IMG/VR virus record: IMGVR_UViG_3300050821_002957
Location: 186,001-250,000 of that record
Direction: 5' to 3' (one strand)
DNA: 64,000 bases
Shown here: in pieces, positions 1,234 through 63,328 of the stretch
Layout of the letters: every line of letters starts with the position of its first letter
Position numbering within the stretch: the first letter of the stretch is position 1
The notes under the pieces: model-generated
Databases searched by the model: none
Seen by the model: the letters and a program-made list of their open reading frames with translations, nothing else
Told to the model about the DNA's origin: nothing
Translations under genes and position numbers: made by a program

Positions 1234-1386
1234 CTAATCTAAGGCGTTGTATTGATCACGAAGTTGAGTCTTTGTTAATCGTCCGTTTTCGTAATCCTCC
1301 AATAGTTCTGTCAATTTGTTTTCTCGTTCTTGTAGTGTCGATAAACAGCGCTCGACAGCCGGAAAGTTTGTTTTGAGATAAGTCAC
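1234..1386 (-). CDS. 50-aa late leaderless protein (MTYLKTNFPAVERCL...), absent from the ORF track
   Basis: TAAATA at 1397-1392, 5 nt, then GTG; open to TAG at 1234. Confidence 0.6.
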   Translation of the reverse strand: MTYLKTNFPAVERCLSTLQERENKLTELLEDYENGRLTKTQLRDQYNALD

Positions 1387-1459
1387 CAGAATATTTAGTC
1401 GTGGTAGAAATGGCTTTTAACTCCTTTTGTTTCAAGTAAATAGAGGTATCCCTTAAAAT

Positions 1460-1681
1460 ATGATGGTTAAGAAAACAAAGTTGGCGGATGGCGTGAGTAG
1501 TATCGAATTTTTAGATCGATACGACAAGCCATGCATCCTGCTCCGAGATACTTTGCCAGACGATGCCATCCCTGGGATTACATTTGTGGTGACCGGACAG
1601 ATTCATTTAGATTTGGATCAAGTACGATGGCTGGCTCGTGAATTGTCTCATTTTGCTGAATGGGGGAAATTTTTAGAATAG
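1460..1681 (+). CDS. Hypothetical protein, paralog of 44006-44383
   Basis: Shared IEFxDRY...HLDLxQVxWLxxELxH pattern. Confidence 0.6.
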   Translation: MMVKKTKLADGVSSIEFLDRYDKPCILLRDTLPDDAIPGITFVVTGQIHLDLDQVRWLARELSHFAEWGKFLE

Positions 1682-1711
1682 GATAAAAAATGCATCTACA
1701 CCTATTTCCAT

Positions 1712-2431
1712 TCAAATCAATCTCTGAGCAAGTAACGCCATGATTTCCTTCTCTTCCTGAAGCGAATGGCGTAACATCTCGTCGATCACGTCAACAGGCT
1801 CTTCCTGAGGTTCTGGCGGCTCTGGTGGGGTTGTTGGGGCCGGTGGTGGTTCTGGGGCCTTGGCCTGTTCCTGAACGTTCTGAGGCTCTGGCTGGCCGAA
1901 CATTGGATCGAATTCATCCAAAAGAGGATCGTAAAAATCTGTAAAAGTTGGTCGCCGGGTTTGCGGTCTTGGCCACAGTTCAAACCGATAGGTCATTGAA
2001 TTGAAAAAATGATCAAGTTCTTCGGCATCGTTCCCGGCTGGTCGAGTGCTATTTGACGGCTTGAACACATGCATACATGAAAACGCACCGAAGTAATGTG
2101 CTGTCATGTAAATTTCTTCGTTCGGTCGTGTAGGATTTCTGTAGATGCGACCGTTGCTTGAAAAGGTCTGATAGATCCAGCCATCTTGTTTCAACCGATC
2201 TTCCATTGCGACCACAGTTCGATGTAATTTGTTTTTTGGTGGTGCCGTTGTCGGTTTTGAAACAGGTGGCGACGGCGGTTTATAATCGGCCTGGGTAAAG
2301 ATCGATGGAAAGTTGTATTTCGTCGCAAGTTCAATGGCCCGAGCACGAGCAATTTCGCCTTCTTCGGGAGTGCCGGGTCTCAATGCAAGCGCTTCGAGAC
2401 TACGGATTTTTTGCTCTATGTCGTGGGCCAT
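1712..2431 (-). CDS. DUF2786-like N-terminal domain protein with Pro-rich linkers
   Basis: KIRSLEALALRPGTPEEGEIARARAIELATKY; related to 59628-60167. Confidence 0.6.
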   Translation of the reverse strand: MAHDIEQKIRSLEALALRPGTPEEGEIARARAIELATKYNFPSIFTQADYKPPSPPVSKPTTAPPKNKLHRTVVAMEDRLKQDGWIYQTFSSNGRIYRNPTRPNEEIYMTAHYFGAFSCMHVFKPSNSTRPAGNDAEELDHFFNSMTYRFELWPRPQTRRPTFTDFYDPLLDEFDPMFGQPEPQNVQEQAKAPEPPPAPTTPPEPPEPQEEPVDVIDEMLRHSLQEEKEIMALLAQRLI

Positions 2432-2450
2432 CTAGAGAGCATTTAGCTCA

Positions 2451-2648
2451 TTAGAGAGTATGCTTGCATTTACGACAGCGCAGACCGACTTCATCATAGC
2501 TGCCATCGCCATTTTCTCGGAACAAACGATGAACTGTTGCACGATGACAAAATGGGCATAGAAATTGAAAGAGGGCTTCTTCAGACATAATCAAGTCCTG
2601 AAGCAAGTCTTCGAGATCGTTCAAAAGGATTTCAGGTATTCCGTACAT
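2451..2648 (-). CDS. Zn-ribbon protein, late leaderless
   Basis: CPFC...CRKC; TAAATA 5 nt before ATG 2648. Confidence 0.6.
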   Translation of the reverse strand: MYGIPEILLNDLEDLLQDLIMSEEALFQFLCPFCHRATVHRLFRENGDGSYDEVGLRCRKCKHTL

Positions 2649-2657
2649 GGTATTATT

Positions 2658-2699
2658 TAGATGCATCTACTTGACAAGATCCGACGAATGTGATATCTT
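2658..2699 (+). promoter_or_regulatory. Sigma70-type promoter with TAGATGCATCTA palindrome just upstream of the -35
   Basis: Palindrome 2658-2669, TTGACA 2671, 17 bp, TGnTATCTT, ATG 6 nt later. Confidence 0.75.
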
Positions 2700-2705
2700 C
2701 CAATC

Positions 2706-3059
2706 ATGGCTTACATAGCAATGAGCGCTTGTGGACAGTGCCATCAAATTTTTTCGTACAATCCACATCTTGTCCCGTCTTTGAACGATGTGCCGTTTTG
2801 CCGTAATTGTGTCGAACGTGCAAATCCCAAACGCATCGCCAACGGTCTGGAGCCGATCAACATCCTCCCTGGCGCATACGAATCGGTCGCCGAAACTCCC
2901 GCTGAAGAGATGGAAACGGATTATCAATGCGATCAAGAGTACTACGATCCAGAAGAGCCGATGACGCCATACGACAGCGACGATGAATTTGAAGATGAAT
3001 TCAATGACGATATCGACCGGGACGATCTTGACGATTATCCACCGGCATTTCGCCCCTAA
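2706..3059 (+). CDS. Zn-finger protein with highly acidic C-terminal tail
   Basis: CGQC...CRNC; D/E-rich tail. Confidence 0.7.
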   Translation: MAYIAMSACGQCHQIFSYNPHLVPSLNDVPFCRNCVERANPKRIANGLEPINILPGAYESVAETPAEEMETDYQCDQEYYDPEEPMTPYDSDDEFEDEFNDDIDRDDLDDYPPAFRP

Positions 3060-3794: not shown

Positions 3795-3835
3795 TAGATA
3801 CATCTATTGACATCTGGTCGGGAATGCGGTATCCT
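3795..3835 (+). promoter_or_regulatory. Sigma70-type promoter with palindrome
   Basis: TAGATACATCTA-TTGACA-17 bp-TATCCT, ATG 6 nt later. Confidence 0.75.
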
Positions 3836-3841
3836 TTGAAT

Positions 3842-4138
3842 ATGAAGACACGGAAAACAGTCAACGTTGCGGAAATGCTTTTCACAGCGAACTATTTTAT
3901 GAAGCATTCCAAACCGGAGCAGGTTGGTGAGCGCCGGGGAACCGCCAGTTTGCTGGAATCGATGCTGCACGCCAGTGGCAACTACAGTGGTTTTGGCTAC
4001 ATCGAACTGACGAATGCCGGAACCAATCAGCAGAAGTTAGGTGACGAGAGCCGTGTGTTCTACTACGTTTCTCAGAACCTTCGGAATGACTACAAAGGTG
4101 TCGAAGATCGCAAAGCTCAGGAAGGATTCGTTTACTAA
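3842..4138 (+). CDS. Hypothetical protein, leaderless
   Basis: Start reassigned to ATG 3842 from promoter geometry. Confidence 0.7.
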
Positions 4139-5620: not shown

Positions 5621-5703
5621 ACGTATCTGCTTCCTTGACAAACTCCACATCCATGTTGTAATGGTTCTGCCCTCGCTAAATAGAAACGAGGCATCCAAGA
5701 CGC

Positions 5704-5997
5704 ATGGCAAAGAATTTACCTCAAGATCAGTACCACATTGAACTTTGCACTCAATTCTGCGCTGACGTTGAAGCGCTGATTAACGAGAGCAACAAGAAAG
5801 CAGACGAAAGAGTCGCCAAGGCCGGAAAAGCTACGACACGACTCGGATACGTAGATGCAGTCCTCATTGTAGCGGAACGCCGGAAAATAGAACCGGACCT
5901 CGCAGCCGCCTACCTCAACCCAGAAATCAAACAGAAAATGCAGCAAGAGTGGGAGAACAAACACATGCTCCCAAAGTCTGCTCGATTACCGTTCTGA
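5704..5997 (+). CDS. 33: Late promoter transcription co-activator, T4 gp33-like
   Basis: YVDAVL...IEPD...LNPEIKQK...ARLPF; synteny with 59 and 32. Confidence 0.8.
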   Translation: MAKNLPQDQYHIELCTQFCADVEALINESNKKADERVAKAGKATTRLGYVDAVLIVAERRKIEPDLAAAYLNPEIKQKMQQEWENKHMLPKSARLPF

Positions 5998-8384: not shown

Positions 8385-8621
8385 TTAGACAGGTACTTTT
8401 GGTTCAAGAAGTTTTTTGATTCCCCGGCGTGCCATCGTGGTCAGCTTGGGAATTTTTTTGGTTTTGAACTGGTTCTTCTTTTTCTTCTTTTTCTTCTTTT
8501 TCTTTTTCTTCTTCGGTTTTGGTGGTGTCAATCCTAGTGTCTTATAAATCGATTTCTTCTTCGGTGGCGACAGCAACGCCGAAGCATCAAACTCTTTTAG
8601 AAACTGGGTGAATGTAAGCAC
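8385..8621 (-). CDS. Poly-lysine basic protein with capsid-targeting-like N-terminus (MLTFTQFLKE)
   Basis: TAAATA 5 nt before GTG 8621; 13 consecutive Lys codons at 8475-8513. Confidence 0.65.
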   Translation of the reverse strand: MLTFTQFLKEFDASALLSPPKKKSIYKTLGLTPPKPKKKKKKKKKKKKKNQFKTKKIPKLTTMARRGIKKLLEPKVPV

Positions 8622-8656
8622 TGGAGTATTTAGTTTTTGCGTGCCTAAATAGCAAC

Positions 8657-8908
8657 ATGAACGAAGCAATTGTATACCAAGTACGCTCAGTCGATGCTTT
8701 CGGCAAACAGAACGTGGTCCATTCCTATGAAACCGAAGAGGCTGCAAAGGTCGCTATCAAAATGATGCAGAAGCGAACACGAAAGCGGTATGTTGTTCAT
8801 CCTGTCAAGAATCGGCCTGCGGAACACTGGGGCATTAACTTTCCACCCAACCATCCGAAGCATCCAGACAATCTTAAAAACCCACCAAAGAGCCGCCGTT
8901 TAAGTTGA
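8657..8908 (+). CDS. Small basic late protein
   Basis: TAAATA 8646-8651, 5 nt, ATG. Confidence 0.7.
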   Translation: MNEAIVYQVRSVDAFGKQNVVHSYETEEAAKVAIKMMQKRTRKRYVVHPVKNRPAEHWGINFPPNHPKHPDNLKNPPKSRRLS

Positions 8909-16844: not shown

Positions 16845-17368
16845 TAAAAACCACTCAGGTGCTTTTCAGTCAAGATCATCCATTCCCATCCATGCTGGTC
16901 GCAGAATTTTTTGGCTTCGGTCCACTTCGCTTGATTGATGATCCAATTTTTCTGTTCGGCGAAGTAACGACGTGTTTTTCGTTTTGGTTCTTTTGGGGGA
17001 ACAGTCGCCGTACTCCATTTACATTCGACCAATCGAGTAGTGATCTTCCCATCCCGATTTTTGGTGATAACTTTGAAGTCTACGAAGTAACGATGCATCT
17101 TTTTGTCGAGGGGTGAATAATATGGGATCACAGTCTCTTCGGAAGACCATCTCAGGACAGAAGGTTGGTCGTCAAGATACTTCATCATTCGCAATTCCAT
17201 CTTGGACCGATAAGTGATCGTATTGATATCACCATCGTATTTTTCTGGGTGAAGTGGTGTAAAGAAGCCTCTACGTGTTCCGTGGGTCTTTCTGCGTTTG
17301 TTCAGTTTTGACGGAGCAATTTCTTTAGCTCTCGGTTCCGGTTTGGGTGTTGGTTGCTGTTGATCCAC
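16844..17368 (-). CDS. 4: Head completion nuclease, gp4-like (TnsA-type fold)
   Basis: HPEKYDGD..YRSKME..WSSEE..HRYFVDF..NQAKW..ILTEKHL. Confidence 0.93.
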   Translation of the reverse strand: MDQQQPTPKPEPRAKEIAPSKLNKRRKTHGTRRGFFTPLHPEKYDGDINTITYRSKMELRMMKYLDDQPSVLRWSSEETVIPYYSPLDKKMHRYFVDFKVITKNRDGKITTRLVECKWSTATVPPKEPKRKTRRYFAEQKNWIINQAKWTEAKKFCDQHGWEWMILTEKHLSGF

Positions 17369-17373
17369 ATACG

Positions 17374-17392
17374 TATTTAGCCCATATAAATA
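17374..17392. promoter_or_regulatory. Back-to-back T4-type late promoters
   Basis: TAAATA on minus (17379-17374) and TATAAATA on plus (17385-17392). Confidence 0.8.
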
Positions 17393-17399
17393 AGTGCAA

Positions 17400-18455
17400 A
17401 TGCCTGCTCAAACCAATTTCAATTCTTGGGTTCAAGCTCAACAGACGAACCAATCAAACGGTCAAGATGCCCCGCTTGCCGGAATCGACACAAGTCAATA
17501 TACGTATTCCAGCTTCATTTATCCGCTTGACCTGGGTGCTCCGGGCGCAGGCAAGGATCACTACATGGTGTTCCATATTAATGAAACTTCTACGACACAA
17601 TATCAGACCACAAATGTAAACGGGGCGGCTCCTACGGGTCAGCCCACAATTGTTGCTAACGCCCAACAGAGTCAAGCAAATGGAATGGGTTCGACAACAA
17701 ATACTCCGTCGCAAAATGGAACCTCTACGTCGGGGCAGCAAGGCAATTCTGCATCAAATCCTTCATCAGTTGTGGCTTATCAACCGATCAAACGAGTAGC
17801 AACCACAATCGTTTTGTACATCCCTCAACATCAAGTCAACTATCATGCTGAGTGGGAAGCAGAAAATCTTGGCGTGGCCGCAGACGTAATGGAAGCGATC
17901 AAAGGTTCAGAGAGTTTGAAAGATTTGTTTAAGTCGGCTGGTGCTTCTGGCCTGAAAAATGCCGGAACCATGTTGAACGAATTGACTGACTTGAATTTGT
18001 CTGCCGCAACATCCGCAGCAACTCGAATTGCAATCAACCCTCACATGGAAGTCATCTTCAATGGTATCGGATTTCGTCAATTCCAGTTCAGTTTTCGATT
18101 CACCGCTCAAAGTGAAGCCGAAGCGTTGAACATCGATAACATCATTCGAGCGTTCAAATTTTATGCAGCCCCGGAGATTTTAGCTGGAGCCGCAGGCCGA
18201 TTCTGGATCTATCCGGCTGAGTTTGACATTCAGTTTTATTCCAATGGCACCGAGAATGATTTTTTAAACAAAATCAGTACATGTGCCTTGACCGACATGC
18301 AAGTCAACTATACGTCGGCTGGTCAGTGGTCCGCACATCGCCCGTACAAATCGACACCAGGACTTGCAGGTTCACCTAGCGTCTGTACCGACATTCAGCT
18401 TACATTCAAAGAACTCGAAATCATCACGAAGGAAAGAATTCTACAAGGATACTAA
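17400..18455 (+). CDS. 48: Baseplate tail tube cap, gp48-like
   Basis: INPHMEVIFNGIGFRQFQFSF..SEAEA..IIRAFK..LTFKELEIITKERI. Confidence 0.9.
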   Translation: MPAQTNFNSWVQAQQTNQSNGQDAPLAGIDTSQYTYSSFIYPLDLGAPGAGKDHYMVFHINETSTTQYQTTNVNGAAPTGQPTIVANAQQSQANGMGSTTNTPSQNGTSTSGQQGNSASNPSSVVAYQPIKRVATTIVLYIPQHQVNYHAEWEAENLGVAADVMEAIKGSESLKDLFKSAGASGLKNAGTMLNELTDLNLSAATSAATRIAINPHMEVIFNGIGFRQFQFSFRFTAQSEAEALNIDNIIRAFKFYAAPEILAGAAGRFWIYPAEFDIQFYSNGTENDFLNKISTCALTDMQVNYTSAGQWSAHRPYKSTPGLAGSPSVCTDIQLTFKELEIITKERILQGY

Positions 18456-20159: not shown

Positions 20160-20393
20160 CTATCGACGAGGAGAACGAAAGGCGTGTTCCCTAATAGCTT
20201 TAATCTCTGATCGCAAAGACTTGATTTCTGTTTGAAGAGGTTCGATCTGCTTATTGATGACATCAGTGATGAGATTTTTTAATTCTCCCACAGCGTTATC
20301 GTCATCGGGAAGTTGTCCCTGGAAAACAGTATCTTCAGTTCTCTTCGAGAGAGCATAGAACAGATGAGCGAACAAATAATTTTGAGTGAACAT
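20160..20393 (-). CDS. Small coiled-coil protein between the tRNAs
   Basis: TATATA 6 nt before ATG 20393. Confidence 0.55.
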   Translation of the reverse strand: MFTQNYLFAHLFYALSKRTEDTVFQGQLPDDDNAVGELKNLITDVINKQIEPLQTEIKSLRSEIKAIREHAFRSPRR

Positions 20394-20410
20394 GGTAGTT
20401 ATATAGAATT

Positions 20411-20508: not shown

Positions 20509-20598
20509 TTAACAGAAGTGATGAAGAACGACGGTCGTAACAATCGCAACGACGTAGGCTGCGAGAATTGACTTGATGATGTAACGTCCGTATTCCAT
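20509..20598 (-). CDS. 29-aa single-pass membrane peptide (MEYGRYIIKSILAAYVVAIVTTVVLHHFC)
   Basis: TAGATA 5 nt before ATG; hydrophobic helix. Confidence 0.5.
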   Translation of the reverse strand: MEYGRYIIKSILAAYVVAIVTTVVLHHFC

Positions 20599-20633
20599 GT
20601 CAGTATCTATCTTCCCACAAATTTTGAATTCTG

Positions 20634-22325
20634 TCAATAGAGGTCTTCACTAAAAAGAATCGTGCCGACGTATTGTCCATCTTTTCCATAACACGATGGC
20701 CTGCCGGAAGCCTTCTGAATCTGCATGGCTTCCTCTCGACCAACGAACCTACCCGTCGATGTCACAAACCCTTGTTCAGCCTTGAGAATGTCCAGCCGAT
20801 TAACATCAGGCATGACACGCACTACGTCAAGACAATGATTGTGCCGGTGACCGTAGTACACTTCTCCATTCGGCATCCTGATCGCAGAGCAAATACAAAA
20901 TTCAGATTCCATTCTCCGATTCTAACATAGTCCGAACGTGATCAAGTTGAGCTTTGGCAAAATCCAATTCAAGTTGTGCCTTGGCTAATTTTTTGTAGAG
21001 GTTTTCCAAGATTCGCTCTCGGTTCCGGCGCAGTCTTACAGCTACCTGCTGCGGTGTCGGTTGGAAACAGCGTCGGGACAAACGTCGAATCAACCACCAC
21101 AAAGCTCTCAGTCTCATAATGCTCTCCGCTTGCGATCCCAAGGCTTTCGTTCCGGCTTGCGCTTCTTGGTCTTGAACATCTCAGGCGCAATTTTGTAAGC
21201 CAGTGCTGCGTTCTGGACGCCGACTGCTCGCACCATGTTGTCTTTGCCCTCAGTGTTCGGAAGAGCCGCCAGTAGCGACAAGGCGTGCATCAGTCTCATT
21301 TGGTCTTCGCCTCCTTGATTCTTCTCATGCGCTCGATGTACCACAGTGTGCTGGCTTCTCGCTTGATTCGCTTCTTGCAATGCACACAGGTCACCGCATC
21401 TTTATCGTTGGTCTTCTCACCTTCGTCCCGTCCACAATAGGCGAACGTCTTGCCTTCAGGATTCGTGATCTCGATGCCGTGGATTTTCATGCCTTCGCCT
21501 TTAATGGACAAATTTCCTTCGCATGGGACAAGCGAAACTCATCGTAGTAATCGCCGATGTAACGCAAACCACAGTTACACATATACGAATGTGTTGGATG
21601 CCAACAGCCATAAGGAATTAGATTTCCAAACTGATCGAACTTTTGGTAACTGTGACCGAAAAATTCTTGAGTCGCTGCTTCCTTGCACTTTTCTCCTGAT
21701 ATGCTTGTTTCTGAACAGCGAGGAAGATGTGGTTGTTTGGTAGCTGGGCGGCGGTTATCATACAGATGAGGAAAAATTTTGGTCAGTGGCTTTGTCGAGG
21801 CTTCCGGCAATGTTGGTGTCGGCAATGTTGGTGTCATTTGCTGTTGCAGCTTTATCAACAACATTTCGAGATCGGCAAGATCAAATCCGATTTCCTCCAA
21901 TTTTGTCATGCTGCTGCTACTTTCTGCGCCATTGCTACCGGAACTGCGGTCAGGCGGCGCTCGTATTCATTCAGTTCTGCTCGAAGAAAAAGCTGGTCGT
22001 CACTCTGACCATTGAAAGTTGAACGGACCCGAGGAACCGGCTGTTGTGCGATTCCGAGTTTTTTGCAAGCGATATCGACATGCTCTTTGACGGTCGCATA
22101 AGCTGCCGGATCAAAAGGTTTTCCGGCTCGCAGCGACTTTTCTTTCAGGGACGTAAATACTTTGTACTGATCAAGATACCATACAATCTGGGCCTTGTCC
22201 ATACCTTTGAAGGCCGATCCACCACAAACCCAGCAGGTCATGTCGATTGGACGGCTGACACCTTCTCCGTCGATGCAAACCGTTCCGGTCCCTTTGCATC
22301 CCTTACAGGTGGGTGTCTTCTTCAT
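20634..22325 (-). CDS. Operon of about six small hypothetical ORFs, several Cys-rich (including 21906-22325, 21487-21909, 20634-20912)
   Basis: Coupled ORFs downstream of the promoter at 22332-22372. Confidence 0.6.
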
Positions 22326-22331
22326 GCTCTA

Positions 22332-47740: not shown

Positions 47741-48349
47741 TTATGCCGGAACGAAGACACCTTCATTGGCGATGATGTTCTTCATGATTGCCCGGAGACG
47801 ATCTGCCGCTGCGCCATACTTCTTTCCGAATGTGATGGCGGCTTGGCGAGATGATTCCCAGATTTCGATTTGCTTTTCGTTGACATGAGGATCGAGGTTC
47901 CAGACATTGGACGGCTGGAAATATCCTCTTCCTCGCTCAAAGGCATTTTCGATCAGGTACATTTGATGCATACTGAAGACAGCTTTGAGGCGGCGTACCA
48001 TATCGTCGGTTTCGATCATGTTGTTGTATTGTCCGTCCAGGCCGGAAAACTTGAACTTGTTTTCGAGAGTGACGACCGACATCAGACAGGCTCCCAGGCC
48101 ACAGACTTCACAATATGGCTGGAGTTTCTTGGCGGTAGCCTTTGAGTCTTTCTTGTTTGCTTCGATGATCTTTTCGACTTCGGTGTCTTCGTACTTCCCG
48201 TCTTTGTACTTGGTTTTGGGAGAGTACATTTTGACGAAGGCTTTCCCGGTTCGGATGGCTTTATATCTTTTGATCGACTTCAGCACATCTTTGGCGACGG
48301 CGATTGCACGTTCTTGTTTTGGGGTCAAAGTTTCATTAGTAGTAGGCAT
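47741..48349 (-). CDS. Hypothetical protein, leaderless
   Basis: TTGACA-17-TATCCT-7 nt-ATG. Confidence 0.75.
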   Translation of the reverse strand: MPTTNETLTPKQERAIAVAKDVLKSIKRYKAIRTGKAFVKMYSPKTKYKDGKYEDTEVEKIIEANKKDSKATAKKLQPYCEVCGLGACLMSVVTLENKFKFSGLDGQYNNMIETDDMVRRLKAVFSMHQMYLIENAFERGRGYFQPSNVWNLDPHVNEKQIEIWESSRQAAITFGKKYGAAADRLRAIMKNIIANEGVFVPA

Positions 48350-48479
48350 ATCGGGAAGGATACCTTAGTATTTTCTAGGTGTCAAGTTTTTGCGGCTGGC
48401 TCCGAACAAAAGGGACCCAATGAAGAAGGCAATGAAGAACTTTCCGATGGTTTTCATATTCTTGGAGTATAGCACTACC

Positions 48480-55359: not shown

Positions 55360-56247
55360 TCAATAGCGGTTATGATGATCGTATCTGTTTCTGGTGGCTT
55401 TTTGATACGCCTTAGCTACATCCGTACTAAATCCATGATCACGAGCAACAATGTGTTGAGAACCGTCTGGATGCTCAAAGACGCCTAAGTTTTTCTTCTG
55501 GTGATAGTCGTTCGGTGAGTGCCCAGTATTGCCGTGATAGTCCTGAAATTTCTGAACAAGTGGATGCTGATTCAGACGATGATGTTCTGCTTCTTGCTCA
55601 GACGTTCCTGAGTAATGTCTACCGTTGTTCTGGTCGTGGTTGTGGACCAAGGTATTGACAAACTGTTTGTGATTGATACCTTTTGGAAACTCTTTGTTCT
55701 TGGTCAGCTTTTGAAACTCTCCAGGCTTGATGTCTCGCACATGGCCGACGTGAGACCATTCATGTTTTTCGTGGTCATGATCAATCAATGGAGGAAAGAT
55801 GCCGCTTTCTTTGTTTGAACTGTAATGATTTGATCCTTTCTCCGGTTCGTAGCGAAGAATACGATAGTTTCCGTTCACCCAATGATCGCCACCTTCTGCG
55901 TGGTTTTGCATGGCACCCAGGCTCATTCCGTCGTGTTCTGAGGCTTTGTGATGCTTGTCGAGTGCGGCTCTGATGGCAACTTTTGTTCCAGAATGGATGT
56001 GTGCATCTTTGCCGTCAAGAACAATGTGATGCGGTGTGTCATGTTTCAAATAGGCTCTGGACGAACCTTTGGGCATGTTACCTTCGATGCCAGTCTTCTG
56101 TCCGCTGTTGGTCAATTGTTTGATCTTTTTTGCGAGCAGGCTTTGCTTTGGCGCATACGAATTTGAAGACGTAACAATCGACCGGAGTTCAGGATGAAGC
56201 TCTTCGACGATTACATTGTGGATGAAGTCTTTAAAATTGACCAGCAT
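55360..56247 (-). CDS. His-rich atypical protein kinase-like protein, putative internal head protein
   Basis: GSSRAY, KVA, QNHAE, DYHQKKNLG, IVARDHGF in kinase order; late leaderless; NFKDFI..VEE N-terminus. Confidence 0.65.
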   Translation of the reverse strand: MLVNFKDFIHNVIVEELHPELRSIVTSSNSYAPKQSLLAKKIKQLTNSGQKTGIEGNMPKGSSRAYLKHDTPHHIVLDGKDAHIHSGTKVAIRAALDKHHKASEHDGMSLGAMQNHAEGGDHWVNGNYRILRYEPEKGSNHYSSNKESGIFPPLIDHDHEKHEWSHVGHVRDIKPGEFQKLTKNKEFPKGINHKQFVNTLVHNHDQNNGRHYSGTSEQEAEHHRLNQHPLVQKFQDYHGNTGHSPNDYHQKKNLGVFEHPDGSQHIVARDHGFSTDVAKAYQKATRNRYDHHNRY

Positions 56248-56256
56248 GTCCAGTAT

Positions 56257-56511
56257 TTAGTCGAACAAACTGGCCTGATGAATCTTGGACAAATGCTTTT
56301 CTAAATTGGTGGGAGTCTTGCCGCCTTTCTTCTTCGCTGAGTGTGTCCATCCTGCGTCAGAGACGGTCGCTGTGTGGTCGAGACGAGGATGGGTATACTT
56401 GGTGACCCCGGACTCATTCGACGCCTTCTGATAGCCGTAATTGCGGAGCACAGCCTGGACTTTCTTGCTCGATTTGGACTCGGCGATCAGAAATTCGCTG
56501 AAGGATTGCAT
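56257..56511 (-). CDS. Putative internal head protein (MQSFSEFLIAE)
   Basis: Late promoter 5 nt before ATG; capsid-targeting-like N-terminus. Confidence 0.65.
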   Translation of the reverse strand: MQSFSEFLIAESKSSKKVQAVLRNYGYQKASNESGVTKYTHPRLDHTATVSDAGWTHSAKKKGGKTPTNLEKHLSKIHQASLFD

Positions 56512-56539
56512 GACTGTATTTAGCTGTATAGATATCCAT

Positions 56540-56758
56540 ATGAAGATTACACATCAAACAGAATTCGACCTCTTCGTGGCGCTCCTGCCTAGGGTGGTTG
56601 CTCAGAATCCGATTACAGAGCCAGCCGAAGTCATGGCAAAGACACAAGAGCTTATGGAGAAAGCCATTGAACATCTGGAAGAGAAAGGCATCGTTAAAGA
56701 CAGCACGCCTAACAAAAAGTTGAGCATTCGTCCACCAAACCGTTACGCTGAACTGTAA
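56540..56758 (+). CDS. Small late protein
   Basis: TATAGATA 5 nt before ATG 56540. Confidence 0.6.
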   Translation: MKITHQTEFDLFVALLPRVVAQNPITEPAEVMAKTQELMEKAIEHLEEKGIVKDSTPNKKLSIRPPNRYAEL

Positions 56759-56762: not shown

Positions 56763-56978
56763 TCAGCCTTTAATAAAACTCAAGAGTTGGCGTGGACTGA
56801 TTTTTTCACATTCGGCTTCGATCTCAACGATGCGGCGTTTGGGAATATCATAATGAGGGAATCGGCCACCGTGAAACCAGCAACGTTTGATGTTGAGCCG
56901 GTCTGCCATCGTATGCAAATTTGGAATGCTGTACGGGACGCAGATCAGGTGTCGAGCGCCATCGGTATAGTAAATCAT
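56763..56978 (-). CDS. DUF4031-like protein
   Basis: HL..LHTMADRLNIKRCWF..PHYDIP. Confidence 0.7.
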   Translation of the reverse strand: MIYYTDGARHLICVPYSIPNLHTMADRLNIKRCWFHGGRFPHYDIPKRRIVEIEAECEKISPRQLLSFIKG

Positions 56979-56988
56979 TGAAATATTT

Positions 56989-57531
56989 ATGAGCTATTCG
57001 TACAAATTCAAAACCAACATCTATTATGACAAAATTGCAAAGGACTTGGCCGGAAGCGAGATTGGCGATGTCACGCAATTTCTGAACGAACTTGCAGAGG
57101 CATTGAAAGCTCGCCATACGCCGGAAGAAGATCAGGTGATTGTGATGCTGCCTGAAGATGCATTCTTTGGAACACTGGCGTTAGGTATTCAGGATGCAAT
57201 CACAAATGCCCAAGAGAAGGTCAAAGAGAACACTCGTATTGCCTTTGCCCAGCCGACACATGAACAAATTGAAGAGAAGATCAAAGAACTGCTTAACGGT
57301 GGTACTGATACATCGGTCGATATTCCATTTGATCCTGATTTGGTGGCGCTTCCTCTTGAAATGCGACGGGCTGAACAGATGAGTGGCATTAAGAGCAATC
57401 CAATTGAATGCCGATCTGATCTTTCAAGAGAAGAGCACATCAAACGAACCACCGATACGCTTCTTAGGAATACAGAAATAATGCTAGGCGACAAACAATA
57501 CAGAAAGCAAATGGGTGATCCTACCGTTTAG
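56989..57531 (+). CDS. Hypothetical protein
   Basis: 180-aa ORF. Confidence 0.6.
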   Translation: MSYSYKFKTNIYYDKIAKDLAGSEIGDVTQFLNELAEALKARHTPEEDQVIVMLPEDAFFGTLALGIQDAITNAQEKVKENTRIAFAQPTHEQIEEKIKELLNGGTDTSVDIPFDPDLVALPLEMRRAEQMSGIKSNPIECRSDLSREEHIKRTTDTLLRNTEIMLGDKQYRKQMGDPTV

Positions 57532-58733: not shown

Positions 58734-59311
58734 TACTCTTCCGGTTTATAGTCTTCCTTCGGATGCGTTGCGTGGAAGACCGGCGCTTTCTTTGTTCCCA
58801 TGCCTTTCACACGCTCGACATGATGAAAACGCTTTGCCAATTCGTGATGAACATGATCGGCATCGATGTCATGAGCTTTGCGTGGAGACTCGGGGAAGTT
58901 GCCGGTGAATGCGCCACCTTTGTGAGTCGCCTTGTGAATTTGATCCAGCGTGTGACCCATCATCTTTTTGTTCGACTGGACGTTCAGAACATTAGATGCG
59001 TACACATGATGATACTTCTTGTCTAGTGCATGAGGATCGTGAACGCCGGGTTTCTGGTTGCTTCCAAATTCGTGTGCTGTGACGTTGTGACCTTTTTCAC
59101 GAAGGCGCTTTGCGTGCGCTGCTTCGTGGCCTGCACCGAAATCGAGAAGATGGCGACCTGCCTTGTCGTTGTGTTTAGCTTCGACAGCTTCGACGTGACG
59201 AGGCACCAGGGCCTTTGCGCCGACTGCACCAGCCGCACGAGAAGTGCTGTTGGCGATTTTCTTTTCTTCGTCGCTAAATTCGAGCAGCCAGTTGGTAAAG
59301 GACTTCATCAT
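58733..59311 (-). CDS. His-rich class I SAM-dependent methyltransferase-like protein, putative internal head protein
   Basis: LLDFGAG motif I, VTAHE motif II, YHHVYASNVLNV; late leaderless; KSFTNWLLE N-terminus. Confidence 0.7.
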   Translation of the reverse strand: MMKSFTNWLLEFSDEEKKIANSTSRAAGAVGAKALVPRHVEAVEAKHNDKAGRHLLDFGAGHEAAHAKRLREKGHNVTAHEFGSNQKPGVHDPHALDKKYHHVYASNVLNVQSNKKMMGHTLDQIHKATHKGGAFTGNFPESPRKAHDIDADHVHHELAKRFHHVERVKGMGTKKAPVFHATHPKEDYKPEE

Positions 59312-59627
59312 GCCAGTATTTAGCTGGCTTTGACTCCTACTTCCTTCAACTTACGAGGACGGCCTGCTTTGCGTCCCTTTACACGGTCGTACACACTGCG
59401 CTTGTGACTGTATCTGCGGCTACGAAAGATTTTATAGGCACGCTGAGTCAAAGTTTCGTCTTCTTTCATTTTAACACTCTCGATTGGAGTAGCGAAAATA
59501 TTGACCGGGCCGCAGCCTGTAAATTCGTATCCACAGTGTTCGCAGCCGAGACACGGTTCATTCACACAAACACCCGGCGAAAGTTTCTTTGGTTTATCGT
59601 TTGAAAGTTGAAATGCCATGACGGTAT

Positions 59628-60167
59628 CTATGTCACATGTAAATGCATGTGCTGTTGCAAATCCTTTGGTGTCTGACCAGCGAAGCGAATCATACCCGAG
59701 ATGTAATGAGTCCAGCCATCTGGTGTGATTTCGATTTGATGATCGTACATTCCAGGCCGGTCGGAAACGAACATCAAACTTTGAGGACGGCGTTCGATTC
59801 TCCATCCAAATTTGCGAAGCACGGTCATGTACTGATCGGAGACAGGTTTCGGGGCAGGTTGTGCCGCTGCTCCTGGAGATGGCTGTGGAATGGGCGCTGG
59901 ATCGGGCTGTAACGTCGCCAGATCGATTCCATGCTTCTCGGCAAGGCGTTCGGCCTGCTGACGTGCATTGATGCCTTCCGCAGCCGTTCCAGGCCGGGAA
60001 GCCAACGCCATCAAATTTCTGATTGTGGCAACGTGATCTCGTTCTGGACCTGATTTGATCTCTTCGTAATAGAGATGAATCACATTGTCGCCGATGCCTA
60101 CACCATGAATGCCATTTTCACCCAGGAACTCATCTCGAATTTTTGCTTTGGTTTCAAGAAGTGTCAT
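59628..60167 (-). CDS. DUF2786-like domain protein with C-terminal module shared with 56257-56511
   Basis: IRNLMALASRPGT..AERLAEKHGI; VLRKFGW..DH..GWTH..G.TP..L..H. Confidence 0.6.
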   Translation of the reverse strand: MTLLETKAKIRDEFLGENGIHGVGIGDNVIHLYYEEIKSGPERDHVATIRNLMALASRPGTAAEGINARQQAERLAEKHGIDLATLQPDPAPIPQPSPGAAAQPAPKPVSDQYMTVLRKFGWRIERRPQSLMFVSDRPGMYDHQIEITPDGWTHYISGMIRFAGQTPKDLQQHMHLHVT

Positions 60168-60390: not shown

Positions 60391-60712
60391 TGGTTGTGGC
60401 GGCTCCTACCATTACATAGCGATTCAGCTTTTCTGCGGTTGCCATTACCTTCTCAAGGCTGACTCGACCGGGCGAGCAAACCAATTCAGTCCCACGTCCA
60501 CCTTCTCGGCGAGGTAACCAATAGTTGCCGCCATCCTTTGTGTCTCTGAATTTTTCCATCAATGTGGCGATGTATTCTTCTGCTTTGACCTTGGGAAGAT
60601 TGCCCACGTCGATGTAGAAGATTCTTGATTGTGTGCTGCTTTCCTCAATTTGAAATGCCATCTTGAGCGTTTCGAGGCGCAGGAGTTGTTCGTGTTGCAT
60701 GTAGTCACTCAT
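60383..60712 (-). CDS. Mini protein carrying the T4-type portal (gp20) clip segment
   Basis: RIFYIDVGNLPKVKAEEY and YWLPRREGGRGTE are gp20 signature strings. Confidence 0.8.
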   Translation of the reverse strand: MSDYMQHEQLLRLETLKMAFQIEESSTQSRIFYIDVGNLPKVKAEEYIATLMEKFRDTKDGGNYWLPRREGGRGTELVCSPGRVSLEKVMATAEKLNRYVMVGAATTNE

Positions 60713-60748
60713 GCAACTATATATACGTTCAAGCTCTTGGAAACAGGA

Positions 60749-61033: not shown

Positions 61034-61297
61034 GTTCAAAGTTCTGTGGCGACCACTTTCAAAATTGAACGTAAGCGCCACTCGTCGTCGCCCTCGCACG
61101 AAATCAGGCGCAGTGAGAAATATGGAAATCCCATTTGGTTCTTCTCTTCGATCACTTCAAACTCCATACGATCAGGCCGCAGATGCTCTTCCCACGCTTT
61201 GACAATGTGAAGGCGCAACTGCGGAGCAAGATGGCTGAACGCACTATCAGGATTGTCGTATTGGCCGGGAGTGAAAACAATCACTCCCGGCTTCATT

Positions 61298-61939
61298 TCA
61301 GTTGGCTGATACGCCGTTGGTTTCTTCTTCGCCATCTTCGTCTTCTTCCGGCTCGTCGGCGAGCGTTTGCATGAAGGCTTCTTTGGCGGCGGCATCCATT
61401 CCAATCAATTGTAAAAGAGGCGTAGCAGAGACTAACGTGACGCCGTAGTAAGTGCTGTCGGGATTACGAGGTGGACGATCAGGAAGTTGTGAACCATAGC
61501 GGCCTTTCCCAGGTGCTTCTTGAAAGCCACGATAGAACTCGAATGTCTCATCATCGAGATTCACGATGTAGGCGTACTCACAGAACAAACTATCGAGTAG
61601 GAAGCCGTGAGAATCGATCATGACACCAAGCTCTTCGTCGAGCCACGGAGCGAGACTGCCCTGAGCTTCACGCAACAGGCAATACCAATCCTCAAGTTTC
61701 TGTTTGCTCACTTCGAGGTTGGCCCACTTCTCGTTTGCGGCGATTTGTTCTGCGGTCGGCGGTTCATCGCTGTCGATCAAGACGATGGCTCGTGCGACCT
61801 TTTTCATCTGTTCGATTGACGATCCGATAATGTCGTCAATCAAGTCTGATCCAAGCCCGTCTGGATAGGAGTCGAAATGGTTGTATGTAACCTTGTCGAG
61901 TCCGTCAATTCTGAATCCGAATGCGCCTCGTGTTCCCAT
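61298..61939 (-). CDS. Conserved phage protein (YxHxD(G/S)YPxGxG family)
   Basis: MGTRG..YNHFDSYPDGLG..EYAY; related to 62526-63293. Confidence 0.7.
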   Translation of the reverse strand: MGTRGAFGFRIDGLDKVTYNHFDSYPDGLGSDLIDDIIGSSIEQMKKVARAIVLIDSDEPPTAEQIAANEKWANLEVSKQKLEDWYCLLREAQGSLAPWLDEELGVMIDSHGFLLDSLFCEYAYIVNLDDETFEFYRGFQEAPGKGRYGSQLPDRPPRNPDSTYYGVTLVSATPLLQLIGMDAAAKEAFMQTLADEPEEDEDGEEETNGVSAN

Positions 61940-62438
61940 TGTTGGGTCCTTTCGTACTGAATGCTTCTTTCAAAAATGCTGTTTGAATCTTGAACGCAAG
62001 TTGTCGTGGTTCTGTGAATATTGTAACACCCTGCGTCTCTTCGTTGCTGAATGTAAAGTCCACGGCGCTCTGCTGAATGTCCTCAGAAACGCCAAAAACG
62101 GCCAAGAAGCCGTCGATGGACACGATGCTATGGAAAGTGACCTCTTTGATCACGACGCCCGTCTCTTCATACGTCTCACGAATTCCGGCCTCTTGCCATG
62201 ACTCATGACGTTCGATGTAACCACCGGGCATACAAAACTCTCCCCGGCCCGGATCGATGTTGCGTTGAAGGCCAAGGATGCCGATGTCGCCGCCATTTTC
62301 ATCGACGATGGGCACAGCAATTATGATGATGGGGAATGGATTCAACCAGACATTCCTACCGCAGTTCTCACAATGAAAAGGATAGGCGTTCGATGCGTAC
62401 TTGGTTCCGCAGTAATGACAATGATCGTTTGCTTTCAC
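61905..62438 (-). CDS. Nudix hydrolase with N-terminal Zn ribbon
   Basis: CHYCG..CENCG; Nudix box GGYIERHESWQEAGIRETYEETG. Confidence 0.92.
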   Translation of the reverse strand: MKANDHCHYCGTKYASNAYPFHCENCGRNVWLNPFPIIIIAVPIVDENGGDIGILGLQRNIDPGRGEFCMPGGYIERHESWQEAGIRETYEETGVVIKEVTFHSIVSIDGFLAVFGVSEDIQQSAVDFTFSNEETQGVTIFTEPRQLAFKIQTAFLKEAFSTKGPNNGNTRRIRIQN

Positions 62439-62454
62439 ATTCCGAAGTGTACCA

Positions 62455-62488
62455 CAAAAGAAAGGCCAGCCGAAACAACTGGCTGGCC
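62455..62488 (-). terminator. Intrinsic terminator
   Basis: ggccagcc / ggctggcc hairpin with T run on minus. Confidence 0.65.
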
Positions 62489-62525
62489 GTAGAGAGGAGA
62501 AGGAGGAAATTTAGGCGTTGACGAC

Positions 62526-63293
62526 CTAAACAGGCTCGACCGGATAATTCGGCAGACCGAGACCGGCGATATGCTTGCATGAGCCATGAACACGATGGGC
62601 CATGCAAGAACACTGCCAGCGATGATTGGTCTTGTGCTGACCGATGGTGTACTCGCTCGTGCTGTCCGTGAATGATTTGACCGTGAAGCGATTGGTGTAG
62701 AAGGCAGTGTCCTCCAAGCGAGTCGAGGTACGGGGTATCAGTACCTTCGGCAACACAGCGGGAAGCGGTTGGCGCTTCGGAGCACCAGGAATATGAACTT
62801 CCTCGCACGAGATGTCATTGCCGTCATCGTCGATGCTGACCTTGAAGCAAAAGACCATCGGCAGACCATTGACCATTTTGCCGGTGTCCACGACGTAGCG
62901 ATACTCGATGTCGCAGGGATCTTTCATCATGATGCCACATGAAATGAAATCGAGGCGTTCCTTTTTCGGAACAGAAGTGAACTCACGCTTTTCGTTCGGG
63001 TCCTTTGGATTGTGCGAATGCTCGTGCAGCTTGCCTGCGGCATCTTTGAATTTGTAATCGACGGCGAACATCTCACCGAGGAACACGACGTATCGGGCAG
63101 CGAGAAAAGCATCGTCATCCAGACGATTGTCCTTGAGCTTCTTGCAACGGCGAAGGAACTTGTACAGATCGACGCCAGCGCCCTTGGGATAGCCGTCGCT
63201 GTGACGATAAACGATGGCGCTAAGATAGGGCTTGTTCGTTACTGGATCGATGTATGTGCTGTCGATGAAGTGTGTCGTTGACCGTGTGCTCAT
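62526..63293 (-). CDS. YxHxDGYP-family protein fused to a SWIM zinc finger, leaderless
   Basis: MSTRS..YRHSDGYPKGAG; WQCSC..SCKHI. Confidence 0.7.
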   Translation of the reverse strand: MSTRSTTHFIDSTYIDPVTNKPYLSAIVYRHSDGYPKGAGVDLYKFLRRCKKLKDNRLDDDAFLAARYVVFLGEMFAVDYKFKDAAGKLHEHSHNPKDPNEKREFTSVPKKERLDFISCGIMMKDPCDIEYRYVVDTGKMVNGLPMVFCFKVSIDDDGNDISCEEVHIPGAPKRQPLPAVLPKVLIPRTSTRLEDTAFYTNRFTVKSFTDSTSEYTIGQHKTNHRWQCSCMAHRVHGSCKHIAGLGLPNYPVEPV

Positions 63294-63299
63294 GTATCT

Positions 63300-63328
63300 A
63301 AGATAGCAAAGATACATCTAAAAGTCAA
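63300..63328 (-). promoter_or_regulatory. Sigma70-type promoter with palindrome inside the spacer
   Basis: TTGACT-17-TATCTT; AAGATACATCTA at 63309-63320. Confidence 0.7.

What the first reader, a model, noticed from the sequence alone, without database searches (positions are those of the whole stretch)
1234..63305. Pervasive leaderless gene architecture for both late and early promoters
Seen: late TA[A/G/T]ATA boxes lie exactly 5 nt before ATG/GTG at 1386, 2648, 8621, 8657, 13798, 17368, 20598, 28062, 56511, 56540, 59311 and 60712, and 6-8 nt at 17400, 20393, 23719, 37764 and 56247. Sigma70 -10 boxes lie 6-8 nt before starts at 2706, 3842, 22325, 29943, 30464, 36204, 48349, 62438 and 63293. 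There is no room for a Shine-Dalgarno. The rule corrects several starts and reveals ORFs missing from the track. Known: T4 late mRNAs are normally leadered. Inference: adaptation to a leaderless-competent host, or a way to keep translating when leadered initiation is shut down.
Basis: seen in the sequence. Interest (0 to 1): 0.6.

Follow-up and report, generated by a model that had tools for sequence, protein, structure and literature searches.

The report
Leaderless genes in T4-like jumbo phage
In this uncultivated 405-kb T4-like soil phage, about 130 genes have their promoter placed so close to the start codon that the mRNA should begin at the AUG/GUG itself, a layout absent from T4 and cyanophage Syn9, although no transcript 5' ends have been mapped.

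Summary
All 26 listed sites exist. Across the 405,631-bp genome, 42 of 152 TAAATA boxes have ATG/GTG exactly 5 nt downstream (null 2.8% per offset, P=2e-29). For TTGAC-N18-20-TAnnnT promoters, 40 of 121 have it exactly 6 nt downstream (P=8e-31). Those spacings put the first base of the start codon at the expected +1. Position -1 is a pyrimidine, and TTG never occurs at the peak.

T4 and Syn9, tested the same way, have leaders of 14-39 nt and no such peak. Metagenomic relatives keep the exact spacing while the spacer letters change.

The architecture is not universal. gp23, gp22, gp18, gp19, gp17, gp8 and gp3 keep 16-49 nt leaders with Shine-Dalgarno motifs. Low-copy parts (gp4, gp25, gp13, gp5, gp48, gp20) are leaderless or nearly so. 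One orthologous gene switches between the two forms among relatives.

The phage encodes gp55, gp33 and gp45. It also encodes a late-expressed IF3 whose closest bacterial relatives are all Acidobacteriota, a phylum predicted to be leaderless-prone.

This favours adaptation to a leaderless-competent host and argues against a shutdown of SD-led initiation. No transcript 5' ends could be obtained.

The parts
1384..1398 (-). Late box + start: CTAAATA-5 nt-GTG; ORF 1234-1386 (50 aa)
2646..2660 (-). Late box + start: CTAAATA-5 nt-ATG; ORF 2451-2648 (65 aa)
2671..2708 (+). Early promoter + start: TTGACA-17 (TGn)-TATCTT-6 nt-ATG; ORF 2706-3059; palindrome just upstream of the -35
3807..3844 (+). Early promoter + start: TTGACA-17-TATCCT-6 nt-ATG; ORF 3842-4138; palindrome abuts the -35
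5676..5997 (+). Contrast case: gp33 late co-activator gene (5704-5997), with CTAAATA 21 nt upstream and a GAGG in the leader (leadered late promoter)
8619..8659 (.). Back-to-back divergent late promoters: CTAAATA-5-GTG (minus, start 8621) and CTAAATA-5-ATG (plus, start 8657); 35 bp between the start codons
13796..13810 (-). Late box + start: ATAAATA-5-ATG; heads the operon 13798->9194, which includes the 1430-aa glucosaminidase-domain protein. Orthologs in relatives carry the same box, either with a 16-26 nt SD leader or leaderless
17366..17402 (.). Divergent late promoters between the gp4-like gene (minus, CTAAATA-5-GTG, start 17368) and the gp48-like gene (plus, TATAAATA-7-ATG, start 17400); 31 bp between the starts. 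The arrangement is conserved in relatives
20391..20406 (-). Late variant box: CTATATA-6-ATG; ORF 20160-20393 (77 aa)
20596..20610 (-). Late variant box: ATAGATA-5-ATG; the ORF is only 29 codons, so it is doubtful as a gene
22323..22360 (-). Early promoter + start: TTGACA-17 (TGn)-TATTCT-6-ATG; ORF 21906-22325; palindrome abuts the -35
23717..23734 (-). Late box: CTAAATA-8-ATG (about 3-nt leader); ORF 23459-23719
24692..24728 (-).
28060..28074 (-). Late box: ATAAATA-5-GTG; ORF 27547-28062 (171 aa)
29905..29945 (+). Early promoter: TTGACA-18 (TGn)-TAGGCT-8-ATG; ORF 29943-30221
30427..30466 (+). Early promoter: TTGACT-17 (TGn)-TAAGAT-8-ATG; ORF 30464-31108 (DUF7007)
36168..36206 (+). Early-type promoter inside the 3' end of the upstream gene: TTTACA-18 (TGn)-TAAAAT-6-ATG; ORF 36204-36362
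37762..37777 (-). Late box: GTAAATA-6-ATG; ORF 37582-37764 (60 aa)
48347..48385 (-). Early promoter: TTGACA-17-TATCCT-7-ATG; ORF 47741-48349
56245..56260 (-). Late box: CTAAATA-6-ATG; ORF 55360-56247 (295 aa)
56509..56542 (.). Divergent late pair: CTAAATA-5-ATG (minus, start 56511) and ATAGATA-5-ATG (plus, start 56540); 28 bp between the starts
56976..56990 (-).
59309..59323 (-). Late box: CTAAATA-5-ATG; ORF 58733-59311 (192 aa). The only RNA-run contig (58758-58990) lies inside this gene
59617..59631 (-).
60710..60724 (-). Late variant box: ATATATA-5-ATG; ORF 60383-60712 (109 aa)
62436..62455 (-). Weakest early site: extended -10 only (TGG-TACACT)-7-GTG, with no good -35; ORF 61905-62438
63291..63328 (-). 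Early promoter: TTGACT-17 (TGn; palindrome inside the spacer)-TATCTT-6-ATG; ORF 62526-63293

Best explanation
The window belongs to a complete 405,631-bp genome of an uncultivated T4-like jumbo phage from soil. The first gene of many of its transcription units is fused directly to its promoter.

Early genes use near-consensus host sigma70-type promoters: TTGACA, a 17-nt spacer with a TGn extended -10, then TAnnnT. The -10 hexamer ends 6 nt before ATG. Late genes use the cyanophage-style T4 late box (C)TAAATA, read by host RNA polymerase carrying phage gp55 and gp33 and activated by the gp45 clamp. That box ends 5 nt before ATG/GTG. In both cases transcription should start on the A or G of the start codon. 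The resulting mRNA would have no 5' UTR and no Shine-Dalgarno, and would be translated by direct binding of 70S ribosomes to the 5'-terminal start codon.

Downstream cistrons of the same units use weak SD motifs. The phage runs two initiation channels in parallel. Proteins needed in bulk (major capsid, scaffold, sheath, tube, terminase, gp8) keep 16-49 nt leaders with SD motifs behind the same late box. Low-copy parts and most small accessory genes are leaderless or have leaders of 1-5 nt. The likeliest purpose is to set translational yield per transcript and to save space, in a host whose ribosomes handle 5'-AUG and 5'-GUG well. That host is probably an acidobacterium.

What is shown: the motifs, the spacing statistics, conservation in relatives, the controls, and the gene content. 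What is inferred: the transcription start positions, the timing classes, the 70S mechanism, the yield-tuning role and the host.
For: 1. Annotation-free offset spikes: 42/152 TAAATA at +5 (P=2e-29) and 40/121 sigma70-type at +6 (P=8e-31).
2. The geometry equals +1. The T4 box occupies -13 to -6 (PMC2988020), and a 6-nt discriminator is the canonical sigma70 spacing.
3. Signature of the initiating dinucleotide: -1 is C/T in 36/42 late and 38/40 early sites, +1 is A/G, and TTG never occurs at the peak.
4. 95 of the 129 adjacent starts are the first ATG/GTG of their ORF.
5. Divergent gene pairs have only 28-35 bp between start codons, and each gap holds two boxes.
6. Conservation: the gp4-like gene keeps exactly 5 nt in the window and six relatives, with different spacer letters in all but one of them, and independent gene callers chose the same starts. 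+5 and +6 peaks recur in every relative locus.
7. The same box drives SD-leadered genes. The ortholog of the 13798 gene is leaderless in two genomes and SD-leadered in four. The box is therefore a promoter and the leader is optional.
8. Controls: Syn9 has 0/25 CTAAATA at +5 and starts at +20-28. T4 has 0/19 TATAAATA at +5 and starts at +14-39.
9. The genome encodes gp55, gp45 and RegA and gp33.
10. GTG is enriched among late leaderless starts: 33% against 7% of internal genes (P=2e-5). This is the pattern of leaderless-proficient lineages (PMC9031893).
11. Host clue: the phage IF3 is 56-63% identical to Acidobacteriota IF3 in all 80 best hits. Acidobacteria are predicted to have 9.7-19.4% leaderless genes (PMC3160421). 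A Bryobacterales genome sample shows an excess of TAnnnT 6-10 nt upstream of about 10% of genes.
12. Experimental precedent: in Thermus phages YS40 and Lalka27a most transcripts begin with the A or G of the start codon.
Against: - No transcript 5' end has been observed. The one RNA run gave a single internal 233-nt contig.
- Sites with 6-8 nt spacing would give leaders of 1-3 nt unless the start site shifts, and in Caulobacter each extra nucleotide roughly halves leaderless translation (PMC8459731).
- The early and late timing classes rest on analogy with T4.
- The host assignment rests on one gene. The phage is 46% GC against 65% for the sampled Bryobacterales genome.
- The link between protein abundance and leader type is based on about 14 core genes and on copy numbers known from T4, not from this phage.
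- Some small ORFs behind boxes (for example 20598, 29 codons) may not be genes.
Confidence: 0.8

Rival explanations
1. The boxes are real promoters, but the adjacent ATG/GVG-type codon (ATG or GTG) is not the translation start. Transcripts would begin there, and ribosomes would initiate at a downstream in-frame or other start using an SD inside the apparent ORF. The genes would then be leadered and shorter.
For: In 34 of the 129 cases the adjacent codon is not the first ATG/GTG of the ORF, so the start choice is ambiguous there. Some ORFs are very small. The max-coding-score starts in my gene model often lie downstream.
Against: Nothing would select for ATG/GTG at exactly +1 if the codon were unused, yet it is enriched about tenfold and TTG is excluded. 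N-terminal codons are conserved from that codon onward in the gp4-like gene (M-D in five genomes), and independent gene callers chose the same starts. In 95 of 129 cases it is the first start of the ORF.
Confidence: 0.07
2. The A/T-rich box next to the start codon is a translation signal, a non-SD ribosome-binding or enhancer element. Transcription would come from promoters further upstream.
For: Internal genes have only weak SD usage (AGGA 27%, GGAG 17%), so non-SD initiation signals could exist in this system.
Against: - The early class has a complete -35/17-nt/extended -10 promoter, not just an A/T patch.
- The same CTAAATA box sits 16-49 nt upstream of SD-led virion genes, and in Syn9 it lies 20-28 nt upstream of starts, consistent with its role there as the late promoter.
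- Divergent pairs with 28-35 bp gaps leave no place for upstream promoters.
- The pyrimidine/purine rule at -1/+1 is a feature of transcription initiation.
Confidence: 0.04
3. The leaderless design lets the phage keep translating after it disables SD-dependent initiation in the host, for example by removing the anti-SD or cleaving SD sequences.
For: The phage carries translation-related genes: a full-length IF3 expressed from a late box, RegA, and 44 tRNAs. Early genes are almost all leaderless.
Against: The most abundant late proteins (gp23, gp22, gp18, gp19, gp17, gp8) and the internal cistrons rely on SD motifs, so SD-led initiation must stay active until the end of infection. Raised IF3 inhibits rather than favours leaderless translation in the systems studied (PMC9031893). 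No IF1, S21 or S1 gene was found.
Confidence: 0.07
4. The pattern is a chance or compositional artefact of an A/T-rich motif near start codons.
For: TA-rich hexamers are common in 46% GC DNA. The loose pattern TAnnnT alone shows no peak.
Against: Binomial P is 2e-29 and 8e-31. TAAATA is under-represented overall (152 observed against about 307 expected), yet 28% of copies sit at +5. The peak is absent from T4 and Syn9 and conserved in relatives.
Confidence: 0.01

Closest known systems
Thermus phages phiYS40 and Lalka27a (and P23-45, from memory): phage-wide leaderless transcription
   Same: Most transcripts start with the A or G of the initiator codon. Late promoters are a bare -10-type element without a -35, placed next to the ORF. 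The host phylum is rich in leaderless genes (bioRxiv 10.64898/2026.04.20.719267; PMC3160421).
   Different: These are unrelated phage lineages with different late-promoter recognition (a TAGGGT-type -10 with a modified host polymerase). Here a gp55/gp33/gp45 T4-type late box is used, a large SD-leadered class coexists with the leaderless one, and nothing has been shown experimentally.
T4 and T4-like cyanophage late promoters (TATAAATA / CTAAATA, gp55-dependent)
   Same: The box is the same (the CTAAATA variant), there is no -35, and the gp55, gp33 and gp45 genes are present. The box precedes virion genes (PMC2988020).
   Different: In T4 and Syn9 the box lies 14-39 nt from the start codon and never 5 nt. 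Here about half the boxes are fused to the start codon.
'-10 region adjacent to ORF' genes of Deinococcus-Thermus and Actinobacteria (cellular leaderless genes)
   Same: TANNNT sits 6-7 bp upstream of the ORF with no SD, and both AUG and GUG are used (PMC12340547; PMC9031893). The early class here has the same geometry.
   Different: Those are host chromosomal genes, often without a clear -35. Here the promoters have strong TTGACA -35 elements and an extended -10, they are viral, and they carry a phage-specific palindrome.
Lambda cI mRNA from PRM (classic single leaderless phage mRNA; from memory, mentioned in PMC9031893)
   Same: A phage mRNA that starts with the AUG and is translated by 70S ribosomes.
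   Different: That is one regulatory gene in an otherwise leadered genome. Here roughly 130 genes across both temporal classes are involved.

Membership tests
Leaderless mRNA gene (promoter fused to start codon) | The -10-type promoter element ends 5-8 nt upstream of the start codon | tested here: met
   46 late starts at 5 nt and 39 early starts at 6 nt genome-wide; all 26 listed window sites verified.
Leaderless mRNA gene (promoter fused to start codon) | The primary transcript 5' end coincides with the first base of the start codon | not testable with these tools
   The only RNA run (X1, assembled contigs) gave one internal 233-nt contig. The geometry predicts +1 at the A/G, but no 5' ends were seen.
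Leaderless mRNA gene (promoter fused to start codon) | No Shine-Dalgarno sequence, and a purine-initial start codon (AUG/GUG) | tested here: met
   Only 5-8 nt are available. ATG 28, GTG 14 and TTG 0 at the late peak; ATG 38 at the early peak.
Leaderless mRNA gene (promoter fused to start codon) | Translation initiates at that codon (70S pathway) | not testable with these tools
   Indirect only: it is the first start of the ORF in 95 of 129 cases, and N-termini and gene calls are conserved in relatives.
T4-type late promoter (gp55/gp33/gp45-dependent) | An 8-bp TATAAATA-like box with no conserved -35 | tested here: met
   Consensus cTAAATA, with no conservation from -40 to -14. The same CTAAATA box recurs in cyanophage Syn9, there 20-28 nt upstream of starts.
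T4-type late promoter (gp55/gp33/gp45-dependent) | The genome encodes the late sigma gp55, the co-activator gp33 and the sliding clamp gp45 | tested here: met
   gp55 is 41% and gp45 26% identical to the Syn9 proteins. gp33 matches PF16805 over its cut-off at window 5800-5979.
T4-type late promoter (gp55/gp33/gp45-dependent) | The box precedes virion (late) genes | tested here: met
   The box lies upstream of gp23, gp22, gp20, gp19, gp18, gp17, gp8, gp3, gp4, gp25, gp13, gp5 and gp48.
T4-type late promoter (gp55/gp33/gp45-dependent) | Transcription is replication-coupled, late in infection, and starts about 6 nt after the box | not testable with these tools
   There is no cultured host and no time-course data.
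Bacterial sigma70-type (early) promoter | A -35 TTGACA, a 17+/-1 nt spacer and a -10 TAnnnT, optionally with a TGn extension | tested here: met
   56 promoter-adjacent cases are aligned. 121 matches were observed against about 49 expected by composition, and the excess is accounted for by the +6 to +8 class.
Bacterial sigma70-type (early) promoter | Used by unmodified host polymerase early in infection | not testable with these tools
   Inferred from analogy with T4 only.

The most novel reading that the evidence does not exclude
The phage splits its proteome into two initiation channels, leaderless and SD-led, and uses its own late-expressed IF3 as a switch. The IF3 gene sits 10 nt downstream of a CTAAATA box. 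Raising IF3 late in infection would dissociate 70S ribosomes and suppress leaderless early mRNAs and low-copy late mRNAs, sending ribosomes to the SD-led mRNAs for capsid, sheath and tube. This would be a virus-encoded global control of translation-initiation mode, in a lineage of 280-400 kb T4-like phages that probably infect Acidobacteriota.
Probability: 0.15. Interest if true: 0.8.

Novelty: new variant of a known kind. Interest (0 to 1): 0.62.

Why it matters
**Why it is new.** Leaderless phage transcripts are known from Thermus phages, from phages of actinobacteria, and from single genes such as lambda cI. I found no report of the T4-type late promoter, or of T4-like early promoters, fused directly to start codons. 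T4 and Syn9, tested with the same script, do not do it.

**Annotation.** The finding gives a simple and highly specific rule for this large uncultivated lineage: box, then 5 nt, then ATG/GTG for late genes, and -10, then 6 nt, then ATG for early genes. The rule fixes start codons and promoters.

**Evolution.** One promoter can switch between leaderless and SD-led forms by gaining or losing a leader of about 11-21 nt.

**Host and testable questions.** The link to a phage IF3 and to Acidobacteriota gives a rare host lead for soil jumbo phages. It also makes two questions testable. Do phages tune protein yield through the mode of initiation? What are virus-encoded initiation factors for?

Tried and rejected
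- **Close relatives in databases.** Megablast of 11 kb against GenBank phages gave no match. IMG/VR held only relatives about 31% identical for the baseplate hub. No cultured phage is closer than about 31% for gp48. Comparative work therefore relied on metagenome contigs.
- **RNA evidence.** One soil metatranscriptome run (X1) held 6% of the words of window 55300-63400. This shows presence and nothing about 5' ends. No support either way.
- **Other translation genes.** IF1 (PF01176), S21 (PF01165) and S1 (PF00575) were not found in the genome.
- **Annotation-free test on the host sample.** The offset test on the 65% GC Bryobacterales sample was too noisy because long chance ORFs are common. 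It was replaced by a gene-model version with all offsets as an internal control.
- **Divergent-gene gap distribution.** Using longest-ORF starts gave many negative gaps and was dropped as unreliable. Only the pairs with two verified boxes are cited.
- **PHROG/Pfam scans** of leaderless genes in 55-63 kb were mostly blank.
- **Literature.** The phiYS40 paper (PMC1885378) is not held. Three literature or read calls failed on term format.
- **Not used.** No structure prediction or complex prediction was needed. No alternative genetic code is indicated.

Full report
**What the window is.** The 64-kb window is G000:C1:186001-250000 of a single-contig virus record of 405,631 bp and 46.2% GC, rated complete by CheckV. 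It is a T4-like jumbo phage.
- The window encodes gp32, a gp26-type baseplate hub, a gp48-type tail-tube cap, a gp4-like head-completion protein and gp33.
- Elsewhere the genome encodes gp23, gp22, gp21, gp20, gp19, gp18, gp17, gp43, gp41, UvsX, gp45, gp55 and RegA, at 25-56% identity to cyanophage Syn9 proteins, plus 44 tRNAs.
- No GenBank phage is close.
- Many metagenomic relatives exist, several on contigs of 280-400 kb.
- A soil metatranscriptome contains a 233-nt contig identical to part of the window.

**Check of the observation.** Every listed site is present with the stated spacing. Most are on the minus strand.
- 62438 has only an extended -10 and is the weakest site.
- 20598 opens a 29-codon ORF and is doubtful as a gene.

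I tested chance without using any annotation, by tabulating where ATG/GTG falls after each motif occurrence on both strands of the whole genome.
- After TAAATA (152 copies, about half the number expected from composition), 42 copies have ATG/GTG at exactly +5. Other offsets have about 4 each (P=2e-29).
- After TTGAC-N18-20-TAnnnT (121 copies against about 49 expected), 40 have it at exactly +6 (P=8e-31).
- With a gene model built from coding potential alone, 73 ORFs have a late box 4-8 nt from a start (46 at 5 nt). A further 56 have a full sigma70-type promoter 5-8 nt from a start (39 at 6 nt).
- In 95 of these 129 cases that codon is the first ATG/GTG of the ORF.

**Why this means leaderless.**
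- The T4 late box occupies -13 to -6 (PMC2988020). Five further bases therefore put the next base at +1. A 6-nt discriminator after a -10 hexamer does the same for sigma70 promoters.
- The base before the start codon is C or T in 36/42 late and 38/40 early cases. The start codon begins with a purine, and TTG never occurs at the peak. That is the signature of a transcription start point, not of a ribosome-binding site.
- The early promoters are near-consensus: TTGACA, 17 nt, TGn, TAnnnT.
- Three divergent gene pairs in the window have only 28-35 bp between their start codons, and each gap holds two back-to-back boxes. There is no room for any other promoter or leader.

**Comparative evidence.** I fetched the gp4/gp48 locus from eight relatives, 40-70% identical in gp48.
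- In the seven relatives that keep the divergent pair, the gap between its start codons is 23-49 bp.
- The gp4-like gene keeps exactly 5 nt between box and start in the window, L005-L008, L015 and L016. The spacer letters differ in all but L005, the second codon is conserved, and the source databases' own gene callers chose the same starts.
- gp48 varies between 5 and 8 nt.
- Each relative locus shows the +5 peak: 5/7, 4/12, 7/12, 4/11 and 6/15 boxes. Most also show the +6 early peak.
- Ordinary-sized relatives with 31-35% GC show the +5 peak weakly.
- Whole-genome Syn9 has 25 CTAAATA boxes, none at +5, with starts at +20 to +28. The T4 late region has 19 TATAAATA boxes, none at +5, with starts at +14 to +39.
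- The trait therefore belongs to an environmental branch of T4-like phages and not to the classical models.

**The architecture is bimodal.** Of the 79 CTAAATA boxes:

| Box-to-start spacing | Number of boxes |
|---|---|
| +5 | 26 |
| +6 to +8 | 9 |
| +9 to +11 | 5 |
| +12 or more | 24 (16 with a GGAG/AGGA-type motif at the right distance) |
| No ORF nearby | 13 |
| +3 or +4 | 2 |

- The leadered set contains gp23 (+41), gp22 (+38), gp18 (+49), gp19 (+22), gp17 (+27), gp8 (+16), gp3 (+22) and gp33 (+21).
- The fused set contains gp4, gp25, gp13 and gp5 (+5), gp48 (+7), gp20 (+9) and the phage IF3 (+10).
- By T4 copy numbers (my knowledge), the first set consists largely of bulk virion proteins and the second of low-copy ones.
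- Internal cistrons use weak SD motifs: AGGA in 27% and GGAG in 17% of 202 unambiguous starts.
- The ortholog of the gene at 13798 carries the same late box in all relatives. It is leaderless here and in L006, and has a 16-26 nt leader with an SD in L005, L007, L015 and L008.
- This shows that the box next to the ATG is the promoter, and that the leader is an optional insert that comes and goes in evolution.

**Host and translation.**
- GTG makes up 33% of late leaderless starts against 7% of internal starts (P=2e-5). 5'-GUG is efficient only in leaderless-proficient lineages (PMC9031893, PMC8459731).
- The phage encodes a full-length IF3 with both N and C domains, 179 aa, at genome 127026-127565 on the minus strand. 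It lies 10 nt downstream of a CTAAATA box.
- Its 80 best bacterial matches (56-63% identity) are all Acidobacteriota, mainly Bryobacterales and Solibacteraceae. One of them is evidently mislabelled.
- Acidobacteria were predicted to have 9.7-19.4% leaderless genes in 3 of 3 genomes (PMC3160421).
- A 400-kb sample of one of these Bryobacterales genomes shows an excess of TAnnnT 6-10 nt upstream of about 10% of genes, beside a normal SD peak.
- The second inference, that leadered initiation is shut down, conflicts with the phage's reliance on SD leaders for its bulk late proteins. It also conflicts with the known inhibitory effect of excess IF3 on leaderless translation.
- The host call rests on one gene, and the GC contents differ by 19 points. 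I hold it at about 50%.

**Comparison with what is known.**
- Phage-wide leaderless transcription has been shown experimentally for Thermus phages YS40 and Lalka27a.
- The cellular analogue is the '-10 next to the ORF' pattern of Deinococcus-Thermus and Actinobacteria.
- I found no report of it for gp55-type late promoters or for any T4-like phage.
- I therefore class the finding as a new variant of a known kind.

**Limits.**
- No 5' end was observed.
- The timing classes, the 70S pathway, the yield-tuning role and the IF3 switch idea are inferences.
- The claims about corrected starts and missing ORFs could not be checked without the annotation track.

Noticed in passing
Genome-wide; in the window at about 2660-2670, 3795-3806, 22361-22372(-), 30415-30426, and inside the spacer at 63291-63328(-): The 10-12 bp palindrome (T)AGATRYATCT(A) occurs 29 times against about 2 expected. 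22 of the 29 copies sit at early leaderless promoters, at fixed positions: abutting the -35 or 8-9 nt into the spacer. It is also present at early promoters of relatives L005 and L007. It is a likely operator for a phage regulator of early transcription.
   Followed up: partly
G000:C1:127026-127565 (-) = L018:527-1066 (outside the window): A phage-encoded full-length translation initiation factor IF3 (IF3_N + IF3_C, 179 aa) lies 10 nt downstream of a CTAAATA late box. Its best bacterial relatives are all Acidobacteriota (56-63% identity). No IF1, S21 or S1 gene was found.
   Followed up: partly
window 13796-13810 and L005:6202, L006:~6179, L007:5552, L008:5605, L015:6238: The same orthologous gene behind the same late box is leaderless in two genomes and has a 16-26 nt SD-containing leader in four. 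This is direct evidence that the two architectures interconvert.
   Followed up: yes
Whole genome: TAAATA is about two-fold under-represented (152 observed, about 307 expected from composition). This suggests selection against stray late promoters.
   Followed up: no
Whole genome; window 20079-20153 (-): The genome has 44 tRNA genes covering nearly all amino acids, clustered at 3-10 kb, 106-140 kb and 285-296 kb. One of them (tRNA-Cys) lies in the window. A large tRNA set fits a phage whose GC content (46%) is far from that of its putative host (about 65%).
   Followed up: no
G000:C1 ~960-1000 and ~405075-405111: Near-identical early promoter plus start regions sit at both ends of the contig. 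They have the same palindrome, -35, spacer pattern and first codons. This indicates either paralogous genes or a terminal redundancy or wrap-around of the assembly.
   Followed up: no
window 9194-13486 (-): A 1430-aa protein with a C-terminal glucosaminidase/lytic-transglycosylase-like domain sits downstream of the baseplate-hub genes. In relatives the equivalent giant protein carries different lytic domains (Glyco_hydro_19, VgrG3-like C, Peptidase_M23, phage lysozyme), so the cell-wall-degrading module appears to have been swapped.
   Followed up: no
L006:11190-12026, L007:11076-11777, L008:11025-11891, L015:11239-12390, L017:11027-11752: Relatives carry a GIY-YIG/NUMOD3 homing-endonuclease gene immediately downstream of gp48. 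Some of these genes have their own box-5-ATG start (L007:11076). No such gene is evident at the equivalent place in the window (18456-18550).
   Followed up: no
G000:C1:345507-345923 (+): A RegA homologue (47% identical to Syn9 RegA) is present. RegA represses translation by binding the ribosome-binding regions of early mRNAs in T4. How it would act on leaderless early mRNAs is an open question.
   Followed up: no
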